Assembly: GCF_006345805.1 (NCBI RefSeq) | Contig: NC_043016.1 | Span: 19,096,001-19,160,000, forward strand | DNA from: Octopus sinensis | Lineage: Eukaryota | Direction of reading: 5' to 3' | DNA: 64,000 bases | Part shown: positions 6,177-27,284 of the stretch, piece by piece | Layout of the letters: each line of letters opens with the position of its first letter | How positions within the stretch are numbered: the first letter of the stretch is position 1 | Notes under the pieces: generated by a model | Told to the model about the DNA's origin: nothing | The model's input: the letters and a program-made list of their open reading frames with translations, nothing else | Databases searched by the model: none | Position numbers and translations under genes: made by a program

Positions 6177-6694
6177 GAGTGAGAGAGCAGTGCATGCCAT
6201 CAAAGTAACACTGGGGTAAAATATACGAAGCCCAGTATACCCATCATGACTACCCATCTGATAAGGGTACACCAGGCACATGCGTCACAACCATATGTGC
6301 GCGACATGGTGATCTCATATCAAGATAAACAGCACATGACCTTGCAGGTGGGACCCAGTTACAATTTTCTTCAGATCGAGTAACTCATCCCGCTCAAAAG
6401 GTCCCTGAATAAGACTTGTTTTAAGGATTATGAACAAAACACCCGTGTTTCCACGGGTGAATTATTCAAACCTCAAAGACTTCCTCTCAACACATGGCTA
6501 TGATGCTCCCCCACTACTTCTGCTTATGATCAGAGATGCACATATCGTCAGCCACTAAGGGACATGCTCAACTAGTTAAGGGCAAATAACTGATAAGCAA
6601 ATCAGTGGTATTGAGCAGAATATTTGCTGTATCCCATCATTTATACCAAGATAAAAAAAAGTACATGATAACATTTCCAATCAGTTAAGATCAG
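6177..6694 (-). mobile_element. 557-bp non-coding (AAT)n-associated element, copy 1 (5'-truncated by ~40 nt)
   Basis: Reverse complement of 26728-27284. The minus strand ends ...CTGCTCTCTCACTC followed by (AAT)n. Confidence 0.85.
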
Positions 6695-8785
6695 TTGCCT
6701 TAGTACCGAGCAACTTCCAGAAGCCAAGAGTAGCAAGGGCACTGTTGTTTTACTATGCAGGCTAAAATTATCACCATATTATTCTATTTTAGATGAGGAG
6801 TGCTTTCCGTAGTATATAGGCCGTACCCATCAAAGTTATCTTTTGTAGTTCACGGAGATTGGAGTTAACAGGGAGTTGCTTAATATACTTCTCAGCTCCC
6901 TTCTTTATCATTCCCAACGCACCAGTTACCACTGGTATTATTGTAGTACTCAGCTTCTGTATGTTTGTGATTTCAACTTGCAGATCTTTATAGTGAGAAA
7001 GCTTTTCGTATTCCTTTCTTGAGATATTTTGATCATGTGGGACAGACATATCTATTAACAGATTAGTTCCTATGTTGTAGGCCTTGATCACAATTTCAGA
7101 TCGATTAGAGTCAATTTTTCTCTCTGTTTGTATTGGGAAGTTCCAAAAGATGGTGATGGCCTCGATATTACTACATCCTTTGGAATGTACCTACACCACT
7201 TATCATTTAATTTTGTAGTATTTACAAGCATTCCAGTGGATGTACAACCCTAGTCTGTCATGTCTTATGAGATACTACTTTTCAGCGAGTACTGGGCAGC
7301 TAGAAAAAACATGATCAATAGTCTCAGTGATTTTTTTGGAAATTCTGCACGAGGGGTCAGATTCATCTTTAAGAAGGTTTGCATGGTATTTTCTGGTAGG
7401 TACGCTCTGACCGTGCGCTGCAATAACAAAACCTTCAGTTTCCTCTTTCAGACCTGTCCGTTGTAGCCATTGGTGTGTTAGATTTTGATCAATATCTGGC
7501 TTGGACAGACGGTTAGGGTATTTTCCATGGGGTTTACCTTTCCTGTTGTCTTCGATATTATTCATGCAAGCCTTCTTTGCTTTTTGTTTGACGGTTTTTG
7601 CATCAATGATGCGTTTGTCACTATTTGGATCTCTTTGGCCTTTTTGATTGTTAATTGTTAATTGTTAATGTTCACCTGTGTGTTATTGATTTGCTGTGCT
7701 ATTCTATTTATTTCTGAGCTGGATAGCTGTGTAGAGATTTAACTTTGATGTAGCCTGTTATTTACCCTTTGTTATGTTATCTCTATTGTGTTCCCTCCTT
7801 TCTTTTGTGGTGTCTTATGCGTTTTCGGAGATATGTCTAATGTACTGTTTTTCCCTGATTGCGTCCCATTGTTTTGAGTTGTGATGTGTTTTATTTTTCG
7901 TTTTTGGATTTGGTTTGCAAGATTATTTATTCGAGTTCGTGTGTTGAAGCATATTCTGTTGTGTCTGGGGAGAGTCATTTTCTTTTTGTGCCTTATAATG
8001 TAACACACTCACCTGTAAAATTTCCACTTATTCCTTATTTTTATTTTCCTAAAATTTTCGTTGCGTCTTGCAACCATTTCAATAGCTTTATTTTATTTTC
8101 CATGTGTATTTTATCTATTAGTTTGTCTATTTCGGTTTGGGGCACTTTTCCCTTTCGTAGGATATATCCCCGGATATTCTCAAGAGTATTCTCCGAAACA
8201 TTTCCGCTTCTATCAGTATTTCTTCTTCTCCATATTTGCTATGTTTCTCTTGTTATTTCTGTGTTTCCCAGGTACAGTTTTGCAGTTCCTTTTTAGTTTT
8301 GTTTATCGCTTGGGCAGTGACAATAGGAGAGGGGTCTACCTGTTTAGAGTTACCTCTTTGGCAGAACTTCGTCTCTGGTTGTGTGCAATTGTTGTTTTCG
8401 TAACTGAGCGCCTCAAACTCATAGATAAAAATTCGCCTTTATTTGTTTTCGAAGTTTTGTTATCAAGCATATCTTTTTTCTCTCTATTTAAAATGCGACG
8501 TATTGCATTTTATAACTATGGTTATCATTATTTATCTCGTTTAATTTGTTTAAACACTGTGTGTTATACGTTGTCTTCTTCATATACGAAATGTACGATT
8601 GCTTGTGTGAACAATGTTAGCATTACATTTATGTGTATTTATGTAGAAATGAGACTGCATATACGATCATTATTTGTACTCACAGTTTTTCCTGTCTCTT
8701 TTTCTATAGCGACACCGCATCCTCGCGCATTGTTTCAATTCTTCTATGGGCAAATCGCATCTCCGCGTGTGGTTTATATTTTCAC
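6695..8785 (-). mobile_element. Internally deleted R4/Dong-clade LINE (N-terminus plus REL endonuclease, RT missing)
   Basis: 6789-7091 reads LLIDMSVP..KYKDL-like/IIPVVTGALG. 7275-7565 reads QWLQRTGLKEETEGF..CRI..ETIDHVFSSCP. Around 8100-8250 the minus strand reads ENTLENIRGYILRKGKVPQTEIDKL, homologous to the N-terminus of the 16.2 kb copy. No RT motifs lie between these parts. Confidence 0.75.
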
Positions 8786-8791
8786 GCACGT

Positions 8792-9024
8792 AGGCGGCGA
8801 GCTGGCAGAAACGTTAGCACGCCGGGCGAAATGCGCAGCCGTATTTCGTCTACCGTTGAGTTCTGAGTTCAAATTCCGCCGAGGTCGACTTTGCCTTTCA
8901 TCCTTTCGAGGTCGATAAATTAAATACCAGTTACGCACTTGGGTGGATGTAATAGGCTTAATCCGTTTGTCTGTCCTTGTTTGTCCTCGCTGTGTTTAGC
9001 CCCTGGTGGGTAGTAAAGAAATAT
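8792..9024 (+). mobile_element. tRNA-derived CORE-like SINE
   Basis: GGCGAGCTGGCAGAAACGTTAGCACGCCGGGC...GAGTTCAAATTCCGCCGAGGTCGACTTTGCCTTTCATCCTTTCG. Further copies at 37591, 50820, 58400 and 60310. Confidence 0.85.
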
Positions 9025-24434: not shown

Positions 24435-26583
24435 CTATGGTTGTAAAAATCAGCTATTCATCAATAAGATGTGCTTGGAAGACTGTCACAAACGACACAA
24501 AAACTTGTCGGTAGCCTAGATAGACTATAAAAAAGCTTTTGATAGTCTACCATATAGCTGGATTAAGAAATGTCTGGAAATGTATGAAATAGCATCTACT
24601 CTGCGAAACATCTTGTCTGTAAGTATGAGATCATGAAGAAACACACTGATTTTGAACAGTGACAAAGTATCTCTCAATGCTTGAGATGTAAGGATTTCAT
24701 GTGGCATTTTCCAGGGTGACTCTCTATCACCACTTCTCTTTTGTTTAGTCTTAATACCGCTCTCAAAATCGTTCAATGTTGTACAATATGACTATAAAAT
24801 GTTTGATAATATAAATCATCTCTTTTACATGGATGATTTAAAGCTCTGCAAAAGATGGCCATCCACTATAAGGATTACTAGGAACTGTTAAAGAATTCAG
24901 TGATAACATCAGGATGCAATTTGGCCTCGATAAATGCCCAAAAGTTACCTTTATGAAAGGGAAAATAACAGAAACATCCATTGTTAATCTTGACCAGCAT
25001 AATGTCACAAAGGAATTAGAACCAGCGGAGAGCTACTATTTGAGATGATAGAATCAAACATTCAATGATGAGCGAAAGGATCGGAAGAGAATGTTATCGC
25101 AGGGTAAGAGCAATACTCAAGACAGAGCTGAATGCAAGAAACAGGATCGAAGCGATCAATATTTTAGCCATACCAGTCGTTAACTGGTCAATTACTGAAA
25201 TGCGTGATCTTGACAGAAAAATACGAAAATTATTGACAATGCATATATGTACCACCCTAACGCAGGTATAGAACGACTTTATCTCCCAATAAAAGAGTGC
25301 GGCCGTGGACTTTTACAACTGGAATTAACAATGAAGGTTATCACAATTGGCCTAAACACCTACCTGAAATACTATGATGACTGGACGTTAAAACTTATCT
25401 CAAAACAAGAAAACAAGAAAGCATCATACTCAGTAACAAAACAGGCAAAGGAATATAAAGGTGAATTCCAAATACAATAAATCCCAGAATTAGACGTACT
25501 AGAAACAAGCTAAGCATGTGAAAACCCGTGCTAAAACTGTTGCCAAAGAGAACTAATAATGGTTGATGTTGACAAAGCCCTTACCTATCAAGATTAAAAC
25601 AATATCTGTTGTCATAGGCGCCATAGGAATGATAGCAAAAGGGGCTGATTCCTACCTAGCTCAGATACCAGGATACACCAAAATAGTAGAAATTCAAATT
25701 ATAGTGCTGATGGTTAGTGTCTTCTGGCTTAAAATCAGAAACAGAAGGGATTATCATAGCAGCCCAAGATCAATGCCTACCAACAAGGAACTACCAGGCC
25801 GACATATTAAAGAACGGCAGTAGCTCAACATGTCGTGTATGTCAACAACAAAATGAAACCATTAATCAAGTTGTCTCCATGTACAGTCTTCTTGCGCCTA
25901 CAGAGTATCTCCACAGGCATGATAGAGCAGCACAGTATATTCAATGGGTAATTTGCAAAAGCCTGGACCTGTCCCATGATAATAATTAGTACGAACACAA
26001 AGTACTTCCAGTGCTTGAAAATGATCACATCTCAATACTTAGGAACTTCACCGTTCAAACTGACAGAAATATAGACGTGAATAGTCCAGACATTATATTG
26101 AAAGTCGTCAGACAAAAACCATGCCCCCTTATTGATATGACTGTCCCAATCGACATAAATGCATCTGTCAAGACCTAGCAATAACTGAGCAAGTATAAAA
26201 ATATCAAAATAGAAATTGGCAAAATATGGAACATCAAGATTAAAACAATATCTGTTGTCATAGGCGCCATAGGAATGATAGCAAAAGGGGCTGATTGCTA
26301 CCTAGCTCAGATACCAGGATACACCAAAATAGTAGAAATTCAAAATATAGTGCTGATAGGGACTGTCCATATCCTATGTAAAATACTATCCATTTAATCT
26401 AAAGTTTTAAAACAAACTCATAATTTTCTTATATTCTCTTAAACATTCTCTAGAACAATACTATGTGCCAATCCAAATATATGACACCTTAGGCATAACA
26501 CCAACAGGAACTTCTAACTTGTTATCTCTTGAGATCTCTGGGAGAAACATGGAGCCAACTTGAACAAATATAAAGCAAAGGTC
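24435..26583 (+). mobile_element. 5'-truncated R4/Dong LINE (family B) with RT and REL, ending at (AAT)n
   Basis: GCKNQLFINK..IDYKKAFDSLP, GIFQGDSLSPLLF, FYMDDLKL, GLKSETEG, CRVC. Its 3'UTR is similar to 14800-14995. Confidence 0.88.
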
Positions 26584-26727
26584 AATAATAATAATAAAAA
26601 TGATGATGATGATGATGATGATGATGATGATGATGATGATAATAATAATAATAATAATAATAATAATAATAATAATAATAATAATAATAATAATAATAAT
26701 AATAATAAGGATAATAATAATAATAAA

Positions 26728-27284
26728 ATGCCCTGATGCAATACCAGACAGTGGCTCTCGTGACTTCTGATCTTAACTGATTGGAAGTGTTATCATGTAC
26801 ATTGTTTTGTCTTGGTATAAAAGATGGGCTACAGCAAATATTCTGCTCAATACCACAGATTTGCTTGTCAGTTGTTTGACGATAACCAGTTGAGCAAAGT
26901 CCCTTAGTGGCTGACAATATGTGCATCTCTGATCACAAGCAGAAGTAGTGGGGGAGCATCATAGCCGTGCGTTGAAAGGAATTCTTAGTGGCTTGGATAA
27001 TTCACTTTTGGAAACAGGGGTGGTTCGTTCAACATCCTTAAACAATCCTTATTCAAGCACCTTTTGAGTGGGATGGGCTATTCGACAAGAAGAAAATTCT
27101 AACTGGGCCCCACCTGCAAGGTCATGTGCTGTTTATCTTGATATGAGATCACCATGTCGCGCACATATGGTTGTGATGCATGTGCCTGGTGCACCCTTAT
27201 CAGACGGGTAGTCATGATGGGTATATTGGGTTTCGTATATTTTACCCCAGTGTCACTTTGATGGCATGCACTGCTCTCTCACTC
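26728..27284 (+). mobile_element. 557-bp element copy 5 (full length)
   Basis: Same termini as copy 3, with (AAT)n on both sides. Confidence 0.9.

What the first reader, a model, noticed from the sequence alone, without database searches (positions are those of the whole stretch)
6177..27284. A ~557-nt non-coding element that co-inhabits (AAT)n targets with R4/Dong LINEs: candidate non-tRNA parasite RNA of a site-specific retrotransposon
Seen: five copies (6177-6694 minus; 15899-16141, 20557-21103, 23584-23932 and 26728-27284 plus). Four end at exactly ...CTGCTCTCTCACTC followed by (AAT)n. Three start at ATGCCCTGATGC after (AAT)n, and two are 5'-truncated near the same point. All have the same polarity relative to (AAT)n as the neighbouring LINEs. 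I see no convincing ORF, no recognisable tRNA A/B box pair, and no 3' sequence shared with any LINE 3'UTR here. The 3' ~110 nt can form several hairpins (GCACAT..ATGTGC; GGGTA..TACCC; CAGTG..CACTG). Established: Dong elements of the R4 clade insert into TAA repeats, and precise 3' ends with ragged 5' ends are the signature of target-primed reverse transcription. Inference: this is a structured RNA mobilised in trans by the R4/Dong protein through structure rather than sequence mimicry. It would be an unusual SINE-like class with no polymerase III head.
Basis: partly seen in the sequence, partly recalled or inferred. Interest (0 to 1): 0.82.

Follow-up and report, generated by a model that had tools for sequence, protein, structure and literature searches.

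The report
Octopus Dong-LINE tail-derived repeat
The ~557-base non-coding repeat in AAT microsatellites of this octopus genome is real and abundant, but it is built from the 3' untranslated tail of a neighbouring Dong/R4-type LINE, so it is most likely an ordinary LINE-dependent hitch-hiker and not an unrelated RNA parasite that mimics structure.

Summary
The five copies exist at the stated coordinates (81-100% identity). Four end at CTGCTCTCTCACTC + (AAT)n and three start at ATGCCCTGATGC after (AAT)n. None has an ORF, a tRNA, an Rfam match or TIRs.

The window comes from an octopus. The same repeat occurs four times in 70 kb of Octopus bimaculoides and in an O. vulgaris transcript.

The key negative claim fails. 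The minus-strand "copy" (6177-6694) is contiguous with the C-terminal 275 codons of a fourth Dong-like LINE ("LINE-D", 6792-7664): stop codon, 97 nt of UTR with a hairpin conserved in related LINEs, then element nt 40-557, then (AAT)n, with no AAT in between. The 5' head of the free copies resembles that same hairpin. Two alignment tests and a covariance model place a miniature of it at nt 1-30.

So the element is a D-type hairpin relic plus a 518-nt module shared with a LINE 3'UTR. It is a tail-only, SIDE-like non-autonomous derivative, or a uniform truncation product, moved by target-primed reverse transcription into (AAT)n.

Only one LINE::module junction could be examined, so a one-off chimera is not excluded. 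This is ordinary for the field and of moderate-to-low interest.

The parts
26728..27284 (+). Full-length free copy (reference, 557 nt), with (AAT)n on both sides
20557..21103 (+). Full-length free copy (nt 1-557, 91%), with (AAT)n on both sides
15899..16141 (+). Free copy with an internal deletion (nt 1-41 joined to 349-557 at an ATGGCT/ATGGGCT microhomology). Both termini are intact and (AAT)n lies on both sides
23584..23932 (+). Older fragment (nt 48-425, 81%). It follows (AAG)n, and its 3' part is missing
6177..6694 (-). The 518-nt module (element nt 40-557, 90%), present here as the distal 3'UTR of LINE-D and followed by (AAT)n
6695..6791 (-). Proximal 3'UTR of LINE-D (97 nt) with no AAT. 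It overlaps the conserved D-type hairpin (covariance model match 6689-6744, 70.6 bits)
6792..7664 (-). LINE-D: degenerate C-terminal ~275 codons of a Dong-like LINE (CCHC plus PD-(D/E)xK region), 5'-truncated. Identity is 58% to P0048, 64% to P0126 and 70% to O. bimaculoides P0127
6065..6176 (-). (AAT)n(CAA)n tract following the LINE-D/module 3' end
13666..14990 (+). LINE-A copy 1, a 5'-truncated Dong-like LINE that ends ...AGAGTCAAAC then (AAT)n
15214..15828 (+). LINE-C, a heavily 5'-truncated Dong-like LINE. Its 3'UTR hairpin resembles the D-type hairpin (15763-15811, 17.1 bits), and it ends in (AAT)n
16198..20246 (+). LINE-B, a ~4-kb degenerate Dong-like LINE with RT, CCHC and PD-(D/E)xK motifs and 23-bp tandem repeats at its 5' end. 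It ends ...AAACTACTG then (AAT)n
21249..22734 (+). Second, 5'- and 3'-incomplete LINE-B copy (equivalent to 18505-20050, 78%)
23933..26583 (+). LINE-A copy 2 (coding similarity starts at 24306), which ends in (AAT)n
14991..15213 (+). (AAT)n between LINE-A1 and LINE-C
15829..15898 (+). (AAT)n between LINE-C and the deleted element copy
16142..16197 (+). (AAT)n between the deleted element copy and LINE-B
20247..20556 (+). (AAT)n between LINE-B and a full-length element copy
21104..21234 (+). (AAT)n after a full-length element copy
26584..26727 (+). (AAT)n/(GAT)n between LINE-A2 and the reference element copy
27285..27885 (+). 600-bp (AAT)n after the reference copy, continuing into (AAG)n and (ATG)n. 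This is probably the remnant of the original compound microsatellite target

Best explanation
The repeat is a non-coding retroposon family of octopus genomes. It is derived from, and shares its 3' ~518 nt with, the 3' untranslated region of one lineage of Dong/R4-like, (AAT)n-inserting LINEs, called 'LINE-D' here.

Architecture (shown):
- LINE-D is ORF end, 46 nt, conserved hairpin, 518-nt module, (AAT)n.
- The free element is a miniature or relic of that hairpin (nt 1-~40), the same 518-nt module, (AAT)n.

Mechanism (inferred):
- An RNA carrying the module and an (AAU)n tail is used in trans by the LINE-D reverse transcriptase/endonuclease.
- The nicked (TTA)n strand primes on the tail, which gives precise 3' ends and a single polarity.
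- When the cDNA reaches the upstream (AAU)n that was co-transcribed with the donor copy, it can anneal to the (AAT)n upstream of the target.
- That would give the precise 'full-length' 5' junction and define the copied unit as whatever lies between two AAT tracts.
- Abortive cDNAs give 5'-truncated copies that lose the upstream AAT.

The free family most likely began as an extremely 5'-truncated LINE-D copy that kept the 3' module. This makes it a tail-only, SIDE-like non-autonomous element. A variant that cannot yet be separated is that many free copies are direct, uniformly truncated products of LINE-D RNA.
For: - Contiguity. On the minus strand, 7601->6792 aligns to the last 273-275 residues of full-length Dong-like proteins up to their final residue. 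The stop codon is followed by 97 nt with no AAT, then element nt 40-557, then (AAT)n.
- The 97-nt UTR is genuine LINE UTR. Its nt 20-96 are homologous to the 3'UTRs of two related LINEs from other samples (0/1000 shuffles). It folds into their conserved hairpin (z -4.3 and -2.6 in the relatives; 90% of cells paired and 3 pairs changed on both sides).
- The head of the free copies is related to that hairpin. Local match GCT-CTCATGGCTTCTG vs GCTACTCTTGGCTTCTG: 6/500 shuffles. Anchored alignment of nt 1-42: 0/2000. The 20 nt directly upstream of the junction: 93/5000. Flanks of two other truncated copies show nothing.
- A covariance model of the hairpin, scored with filters off over 13500-28000, gives its best non-LINE matches at the first bases of two free copies (20555-20586, 9.8 bits; 15897-15928, 8.3 bits).
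- The LINE-attached module is 6.0% from the family consensus, inside the 3.4-7.4% range of the free copies of 148 nt or more (the 113-nt fragment is at 14.2%), so it belongs to the same burst.
- TPRT signature. Six retrievable 3' ends end at the same base before (AAT)n and a seventh ends 3 nt earlier. An O. vulgaris transcript fragment has the same end followed by a decayed AAT-like tract. All 4 full-length copies have AAT upstream and 0 of 3 truncated free copies do. All nine insertions in the 13.7-28 kb nest point the same way.
- Context. Dong elements target TAA microsatellites (PMC3812793). Dong-R4 covers 92.7 Mb in 51 families in O. vulgaris and has recently active families (PMC13282606).
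Against: - Only one LINE-D::module junction was available. DNA for other O. bimaculoides LINE-D copies could not be fetched.
- In the two relatives and in LINE-C the hairpin lies 17-34 nt from the (AAT)n tail. A LINE with 518 nt between hairpin and tail is atypical. Homology of LINE-D to its relatives stops exactly at the junction, as expected also for a breakpoint.
- The head similarity is short. Different methods give partly different alignments, single p-values are 0.01-0.08, and the covariance-model E-values are 0.3-1.
- The four free full-length copies all differ from the LINE-D copy in the head region (indels), so no parent LINE with the exact head has been seen.
Confidence: 0.6

Rival explanations
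1. The element is an independent structured RNA with no sequence kinship to any LINE tail, and Dong/R4 protein mobilises it through structural mimicry. On this view the arrangement at 6177-7664 is secondary. Either a 5'-truncated element inserted into the AAT tail of an ordinary LINE-D copy and the junction removed the upstream AAT and the last ~33 nt of the LINE UTR, or the reverse transcriptase switched template from element RNA to LINE-D RNA.
For: - Homology of LINE-D to its relatives ends exactly at the junction, and the relatives have only 32-34 nt between hairpin and tail.
- Truncated free copies regularly lack upstream AAT, so junction-associated loss of target sequence is plausible.
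- There is no similarity to the LINE-A, -B or -C UTRs.
- The whole element folds better than shuffles (z -3.0), with a consistent predicted 13+7-bp hairpin ~55 nt from the tail.
- R2 reverse transcriptase is known to jump templates in vivo (PMC3414825).
Against: - The free element's own head resembles the D-type hairpin, and in both the LINE and the free element the hairpin is followed by the same module. A chance juxtaposition would have to recreate that order.
- The hairpin covariance model finds nothing significant near the element's 3' end.
- No compensatory changes were seen.
Confidence: 0.17
2. There is no separate parasite. The free copies are dead-on-arrival LINE-D insertions truncated at one hot spot. 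The cDNA of LINE-D RNA anneals to the upstream (AAT)n of the target as soon as it has copied the AAT-like stretch that follows the stop codon (TAAAATAGAATAATAT...), so most insertions contain the 3'UTR only.
For: - The LINE-D UTR starts with an AAT-like tract.
- Full-length copies always abut AAT upstream.
- The LINE-attached module is as close to the consensus as the free copies are.
- Most copies of any LINE are 3' fragments (established knowledge).
Against: - All four free full-length copies, from two sampled genomic regions, share a head that differs from the LINE-D copy by indels and lacks part of the hairpin. A LINE subfamily with exactly that UTR has not been seen.
- The first 25 nt of the head are not significantly similar to the LINE-D UTR.
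- The internally deleted copy keeps both termini, as expected for a replicating short lineage.
Confidence: 0.15
3. Relaxed recognition. The Dong-like enzymes need only an (AAU)n 3' tail that pairs with the nicked (TTA)n target, as L1 needs poly(A). Any co-transcribed sequence lying upstream of an AAT tract can then be copied, and the element is simply the most successful such passenger.
For: - Four or five LINE families with dissimilar 3'UTRs and the element all end in (AAT)n in the same tract.
- Relaxed versus stringent recognition is an established dichotomy (PMC3747384).
Against: - Related D-type LINEs conserve a 3' hairpin with compensatory changes and LINE-C has a similar one. This points to stringent recognition.
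- R2-type enzymes, the closest solved relatives, bind their own 3'UTR (PMC3414825).
- No processed-pseudogene-like passengers were seen in the AAT tracts examined.
Confidence: 0.05

Closest known systems
R2 SIDEs (short internally deleted elements) of Drosophila (Eickbush & Eickbush 2012, PMC3414825)
   Same: Both are non-coding, lack a pol III head and are made only of parts of a site-specific, restriction-like-endonuclease LINE. Both keep the LINE 3' end that the enzyme uses for TPRT, insert at the LINE's own target in the LINE's orientation, and survive on the autonomous element's protein.
   Different: SIDEs keep the R2 5' self-cleaving ribozyme. No ribozyme was detected here (Rfam negative), and the head is a relic of a 3'UTR hairpin, not of a LINE 5' end. 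SIDEs are rare, whereas this family is abundant (4 copies in 70 kb of O. bimaculoides). The target is a microsatellite, not rDNA.
Stringent-type SINE/LINE pairs that share a 3' tail (Okada/Ohshima model; review PMC3747384)
   Same: The non-autonomous element and its LINE share 3' sequence followed by a short tandem repeat. A conserved stem-loop occurs in the LINE 3'UTR lineage.
   Different: Canonical SINEs have a tRNA-, 5S- or 7SL-derived pol III head and share only ~30-100 nt with the LINE. Here no such head exists and the shared part is 518 of 557 nt.
Dong elements (Bombyx mori Dong, DongAg, DongBg), the R4 clade that targets (TAA)n (PMC3812793)
   Same: The neighbouring LINEs have a single ORF of ~1200 aa in relatives, RT followed by CCHC and PD-(D/E)xK nuclease motifs, no APE domain in relatives, and insertion within (AAT)n in one polarity. 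Octopus Dong-R4 is documented (PMC13282606, PMC9115989).
   Different: The element itself encodes nothing. Placement of the LINEs in the R4 clade by phylogeny was not done here. To my knowledge, and in the literature searched, no non-autonomous partner of Dong has been described.
Heavily 5'-truncated LINE copies (general property of TPRT elements)
   Same: They share the 3' end of the parent, have variable 5' ends, and far outnumber full-length elements.
   Different: Four of eight free copies start at exactly the same base, and they share head-specific changes not seen in the one LINE-attached copy.

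Membership tests
Dong/R4-clade LINE (the neighbours, including LINE-D) | Reverse transcriptase domain | tested here: met
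   Pfam RVT_1 in LINE-B and in relatives P0048 and others. YMDD and FQGD motifs are visible in the translation.
Dong/R4-clade LINE (the neighbours, including LINE-D) | C-terminal CCHC motif plus restriction-like (PD-(D/E)xK) endonuclease, and no N-terminal APE endonuclease | tested here: met
   C..C..H..C followed by RPDI(V/I).K...ID....K in LINE-A, -B, -C and, degenerate, in LINE-D. In the one full-length relative scanned (P0048) the only Pfam hit is RVT_1. The precomputed Pfam domains of the 120 listed relatives include no Exo_endo_phos. The closest solved structures are R2 proteins.
Dong/R4-clade LINE (the neighbours, including LINE-D) | Insertion in (TAA)n/(AAT)n in a fixed polarity | tested here: met
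   LINE-A1, A2, B and C and the LINE-D/module unit each end directly at (AAT)n on their own strand. Relatives L004, L005 and L007 do the same.
Dong/R4-clade LINE (the neighbours, including LINE-D) | Phylogenetic placement of the RT within the R4 clade rather than R2, NeSL, CRE or HERO | not tested
   No reference R4/Dong sequences were available in the tools. This rests on the target, the architecture and published RepeatMasker classifications of octopus repeats.
Canonical SINE | 5' head derived from tRNA, 5S, 7SL or snRNA with an internal pol III promoter | tested here: not met
   ARAGORN finds no tRNA. Rfam finds no match at E<=1 or at gathering score.
Canonical SINE | 3' tail shared with a partner LINE | tested here: met
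   nt 40-557 are identical in order to the distal 3'UTR of LINE-D. This rests on one LINE copy only.
SIDE-type element (internally deleted LINE: LINE 5' end plus LINE 3' end) | 3' end of the parent LINE retained | tested here: met
SIDE-type element (internally deleted LINE: LINE 5' end plus LINE 3' end) | 5' end (ribozyme or 5'UTR) of the parent LINE retained | tested here: inconclusive
   The 5' end of LINE-D is not in the window. The head matches the 3'UTR hairpin instead. No HDV-like or other ribozyme was found by Rfam in the element or in relatives. There is no similarity to the LINE-B 5' end.
DNA transposon / MITE | Terminal inverted repeats and target-site duplications | tested here: not met
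   No TIR (best local score 6 over 40-nt ends). The ends are asymmetric, with a microsatellite tail on one side only in truncated copies.

The most novel reading that the evidence does not exclude
The free element is a self-sustaining, head-less non-autonomous retroposon whose unit is delimited purely by microsatellites. Any RNA read through from one (AAT)n tract to the next would be copied as an 'AAT-to-AAT' unit, with the tail priming on the nicked target and the 5' (AAU)n guiding second-strand joining. It would have traded the canonical D-type 3' hairpin (now a 5' relic) for a new 518-nt recognition module, which it then shares or exchanges with a LINE by template switching. It would be the first described partner of a microsatellite-specific Dong LINE and a major (order 10^4-10^5 copies by crude extrapolation) component of octopus genomes.
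Probability: 0.3. Interest if true: 0.55.

Novelty: new member of a known kind. Interest (0 to 1): 0.3.

Why it matters
Octopus genomes are unusually rich in SINE-like and 'unclassified' repeats, and in Dong-R4 LINEs (3.3% of O. vulgaris). Assigning an abundant 557-nt repeat to a Dong LINE tail improves repeat annotation. It also explains head-to-tail nests in AAT microsatellites, and it accounts for a spurious exon in an old O. bimaculoides gene model.

For retrotransposon biology it offers a natural pair, a LINE and a tail-only derivative, for asking what a microsatellite-specific R2-like enzyme recognises in its template. It is also a case in which the ancestral 3' hairpin has been displaced by a new 3' module. 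It does not open a new class of mobile element.

Tried and rejected
- tRNA, 5S, 7SL or snRNA head, or a ribozyme: ARAGORN and Rfam were negative for the element, the window and related LINE loci.
- Coding capacity: all frames are closed. A six-frame protein search found only one exonised fragment.
- DNA transposon: no TIR.
- Similarity of the element to the LINE-A, -B and -C 3'UTRs and to the LINE-B 5' end: none above shuffles.
- Similarity of the element's 3' hairpin, or of its last 36 nt, to the D-type hairpin or terminal segment of relatives: none.
- Covariation support for the 3' fold: none, 0 of 47 pairs. This is uninformative because the copies are young.
- More copies from public collections: exact-pattern scans of viral contigs gave 2 chance hits. 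JGI metagenomes and GTDB genomes gave 0 hits.
- More LINE-D DNA: the O. bimaculoides proteins P0127, P0159 and P0164 are UniRef-only and have no contig on record. The first 400 kb of the O. vulgaris transcriptome supplement gave only one 3' fragment.
- LINE-E (22790-23295) as a second LINE carrying the module: rejected, because it ends in its own (CAG)n(AAG)n tract before the fragment at 23584.

Full report
OBSERVATION. With window 26728-27284 as query, blastn finds the five stated copies:
- 20557-21103 (+, nt 1-557, 91%)
- 6177-6694 (-, nt 40-557, 90%)
- 23584-23932 (+, nt 48-425, 81%)
- 15899-16141 (+), which consists of nt 1-41 joined to nt 349-557

The multiple alignment and the flanks confirm the termini. 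Four copies end ...CTGCTCTCTCACTC followed by (AAT)n, and three begin ATGCCCTGATGC directly after (AAT)n. The short copy is an internal deletion between ATGGCT and ATGGGCT, not a truncation. All six frames are closed. ARAGORN finds no tRNA. Rfam finds nothing in the element at E<=1 and nothing in the window at gathering score. There are no terminal inverted repeats. The repeat is therefore real and non-coding.

SURROUNDINGS. The window is AT-rich and very rich in microsatellites. Between 13.7 and 28 kb lies a head-to-tail nest on the + strand. In order it reads:
- LINE-A1, then (AAT)n
- LINE-C, then (AAT)n
- deleted element copy, then (AAT)n
- LINE-B, then (AAT)n
- element copy, then (AAT)n
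- LINE-B fragment, then (GTA)n
- LINE-E remnant, then (CAG)n(AAG)n
- element fragment, then LINE-A2, then (AAT)n
- element copy, then 600 bp of (AAT)n(AAG)n(ATG)n

Translations show RT motifs followed by a CCHC motif and an RPDI(V/I)xK...ID...K nuclease motif at the C-terminus of LINE-A, -B and -C. Pfam gives RVT_1 and zf-RVT. A stitched LINE-B protein finds more than 2000 relatives of ~1200 aa on ~4-kb contigs whose only Pfam domain is RVT_1. The closest solved structures are R2 proteins. Related LINEs from other samples are also flanked by, or nested between, AAT tracts. Dong elements are the known (TAA)n-specific LINEs (PMC3812793). Clade phylogeny was not done.

ORGANISM AND ABUNDANCE. A six-frame protein query of the element hit one protein, an old Octopus bimaculoides model (A0A0L8FVA6). 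Its first 38 residues are the antisense strand of the element, and the newer RefSeq model lacks them. Fetching that locus and its neighbour gave 70 kb of O. bimaculoides chromosome CM046623.1 with four more copies:
- one full-length copy, preceded only by ATAATAATAA and followed by (AAT)9
- two 5'-truncated copies (from nt 355 and nt 410), with no AAT upstream and (AAT)8-10 downstream
- one internal fragment

An O. vulgaris transcript in a published supplement starts with the element's 3' end followed by an AAT-like tract. The repeat is thus an abundant octopus family. Divergence from the consensus is 3.4-7.4% for the copies of 148 nt or more; the 113-nt O. bimaculoides fragment is at 14.2%. 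The 3.4-7.4% range overlaps the divergence (JC ~0.065) at which SINE and LINE expansions were reported in O. vulgaris (PMC13282606). Dong-R4 LINEs occupy 92.7 Mb in 51 families in that species.

THE DECISIVE POINT. tblastn with the LINE relatives shows a sixth LINE remnant on the minus strand at 6792-7664. It aligns to the last 273-275 residues of full-length proteins right up to their final residue, with identities of 58% to P0048, 64% to P0126 and 70% to the O. bimaculoides protein P0127. Its stop codon is followed by 97 nt without any AAT, then by element nt 40-557, then by (AAT)n.

The 97 nt are genuine LINE UTR. Their nt 20-96 are homologous to the 3'UTRs of two related LINEs, L005 and L007 (0/1000 shuffles), and include a hairpin. 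That hairpin is strongly structured in the relatives (z -4.3 and -2.6) and keeps pairing across the three sequences (90% of cells paired, three pairs changed on both sides).

IS THE JUNCTION ANCESTRAL OR SECONDARY? In the relatives the hairpin lies 32-34 nt from the tail. Homology to them stops exactly where the element homology begins. A secondary event therefore has to be considered: a 5'-truncated element inserted into the LINE-D tail with loss of AAT and ~33 nt, or a template switch.

Against a chance juxtaposition, the head of the free copies is itself related to the D-type hairpin:
- A local match of nt 26-42 to the hairpin arm and loop is reached by 6/500 shuffles.
- An anchored alignment of nt 1-42 is reached by 0/2000 shuffles.
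- The 20 nt immediately upstream of the junction align with 93/5000, while flanks of two other truncated copies show nothing.
- A covariance model built from the three hairpins, run without filters over 13500-28000, gives its best matches outside LINEs at the first bases of two free copies. It aligns AUGCCCUGAU...ACCAGGCAGU to the base of the hairpin with the apex deleted (9.8 and 8.3 bits).

Each test is weak alone and the alignments differ in detail. All of them, however, place a relic of the D-type hairpin in front of the 518-nt module in the free element, which is the same order as in LINE-D. The head no longer folds as the hairpin. I therefore judge the hairpin-then-module order to be shared by descent. 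This is inference, resting on one LINE copy.

MECHANISM. The following are shown:
- precise 3' ends with (AAT)n
- a single polarity in the nest
- full-length or ragged 5' ends
- a 3' module shared with a LINE that encodes RT and a restriction-like endonuclease

The following is inferred, by analogy with R2, whose protein binds its own 3'UTR and whose non-autonomous SIDEs keep that UTR (PMC3414825). The LINE-D enzyme nicks the (TTA)n strand, the (AAU)n tail pairs with it, and the module supplies the binding site. The free family descends from a founder that was truncated within the 3'UTR.

All 4 full-length copies have AAT upstream and none of the 3 truncated free copies do. This suggests that donor copies are co-transcribed with their upstream AAT tract, and that the cDNA end anneals to the AAT upstream of the new target. 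That is the same logic by which R2 RNAs carrying 28S sequence give uniform 5' junctions (PMC3774820). It would fix the 5' end without a promoter or a ribozyme.

What the enzyme recognises near the element's 3' end is unknown. The D-type hairpin model finds nothing there. The predicted 13+7-bp hairpin ~55 nt from the tail is consistent among copies but has no covariation support. The whole element folds only moderately better than shuffles (z -3.0).

COMPARISON AND NOVELTY. The closest known things are R2 SIDEs and stringent SINE/LINE pairs with a common tail.
- It differs from SINEs in lacking a pol III head and in sharing 518 of 557 nt with the LINE.
- It differs from SIDEs in having no detectable ribozyme or LINE 5' end, and in being abundant and microsatellite-targeted.

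I found no description of a non-autonomous partner of Dong in the literature searched. Published octopus repeat libraries very probably already contain this sequence, as Dong-R4 or as 'unclassified'. I rate it a new member of a known kind.

LIMITS. One LINE::module junction only. No genome-wide statistics, only 134 kb of octopus DNA in all. The clade assignment of the LINEs rests on architecture and target. Copy-number extrapolation is crude.

Noticed in passing
window 16189-16333: The 5' end of LINE-B, right after (AAT)n, consists of 6.2 copies of a 23-bp tandem repeat (TAAGAAGAACACCGGGGAACGTT). It may be a monomeric 5'UTR or promoter array like those of some LINEs.
   Followed up: no
window 22790-23585: Remnant of a more distant restriction-like-endonuclease LINE ('LINE-E', 38% identity to P0126 over the nuclease region). 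It ends not in AAT but in (CAG)n(AAG)n of ~290 bp, so it may belong to a lineage that targets a different microsatellite.
   Followed up: partly
window 23932-24306: The element fragment stops at nt 425 and abuts 373 nt without coding similarity, after which LINE-A2 coding begins. The origin of this junction (deletion, insertion or template switch) is unexplained.
   Followed up: partly
window 6689-6744 (-), 15763-15811 (+); L005 1551-1606; L007 4239-4294: A ~50-nt hairpin (GUGCCCU...AGGCAC with a GC-rich apex) is conserved near the 3' end of related Dong-like LINEs from unrelated samples, with compensatory changes. It is a candidate binding site for the reverse transcriptase.
   Followed up: partly
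L003 17344-17896 (O. bimaculoides CM046623.1): The antisense strand of a full-length element copy provides the first 38 residues (MTTRLIRVHQAHASQPYVRDM...) of the old gene model A0A0L8FVA6. The current RefSeq model XP_014786617.2 starts elsewhere, so this was probably an annotation artefact caused by the repeat.
   Followed up: partly
window 8791-8951, 37589-37743, 50818-50975, 58483-58643: Another dispersed repeat of ~155 nt (77-84% identity, both orientations), unrelated to the finding. It is possibly one of the many octopus SINEs, though no tRNA or Rfam match was found.
   Followed up: no
window 32379-32551: A perfect (100% identity) 18-bp tandem repeat, GTGCGTGTGTGCTTGTAC x 9.6, embedded in TG-rich sequence.
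   Followed up: no
window ~55780-56027: A compound microsatellite (GAT/GAC/GGT)n followed by 182 bp of (TAA)n with no insertion. It is an 'empty' tract of the kind the nest probably started from.
   Followed up: no
window 59154-59837, 60715-61425, 61896-62744 (+): Three ATG-initiated ORFs of 227-282 aa in a very AT-rich stretch without any Pfam match. The last one has no exact match on record in the assembly collection.
   Followed up: partly
L004 (ENA ERZ25042219 ctg13117l) 690-12700: In an unidentified other organism, three Dong-like LINEs lie head to tail separated by (AAT)n tracts. This is the same nesting pattern as in the window, and no 557-nt element is present.
   Followed up: partly
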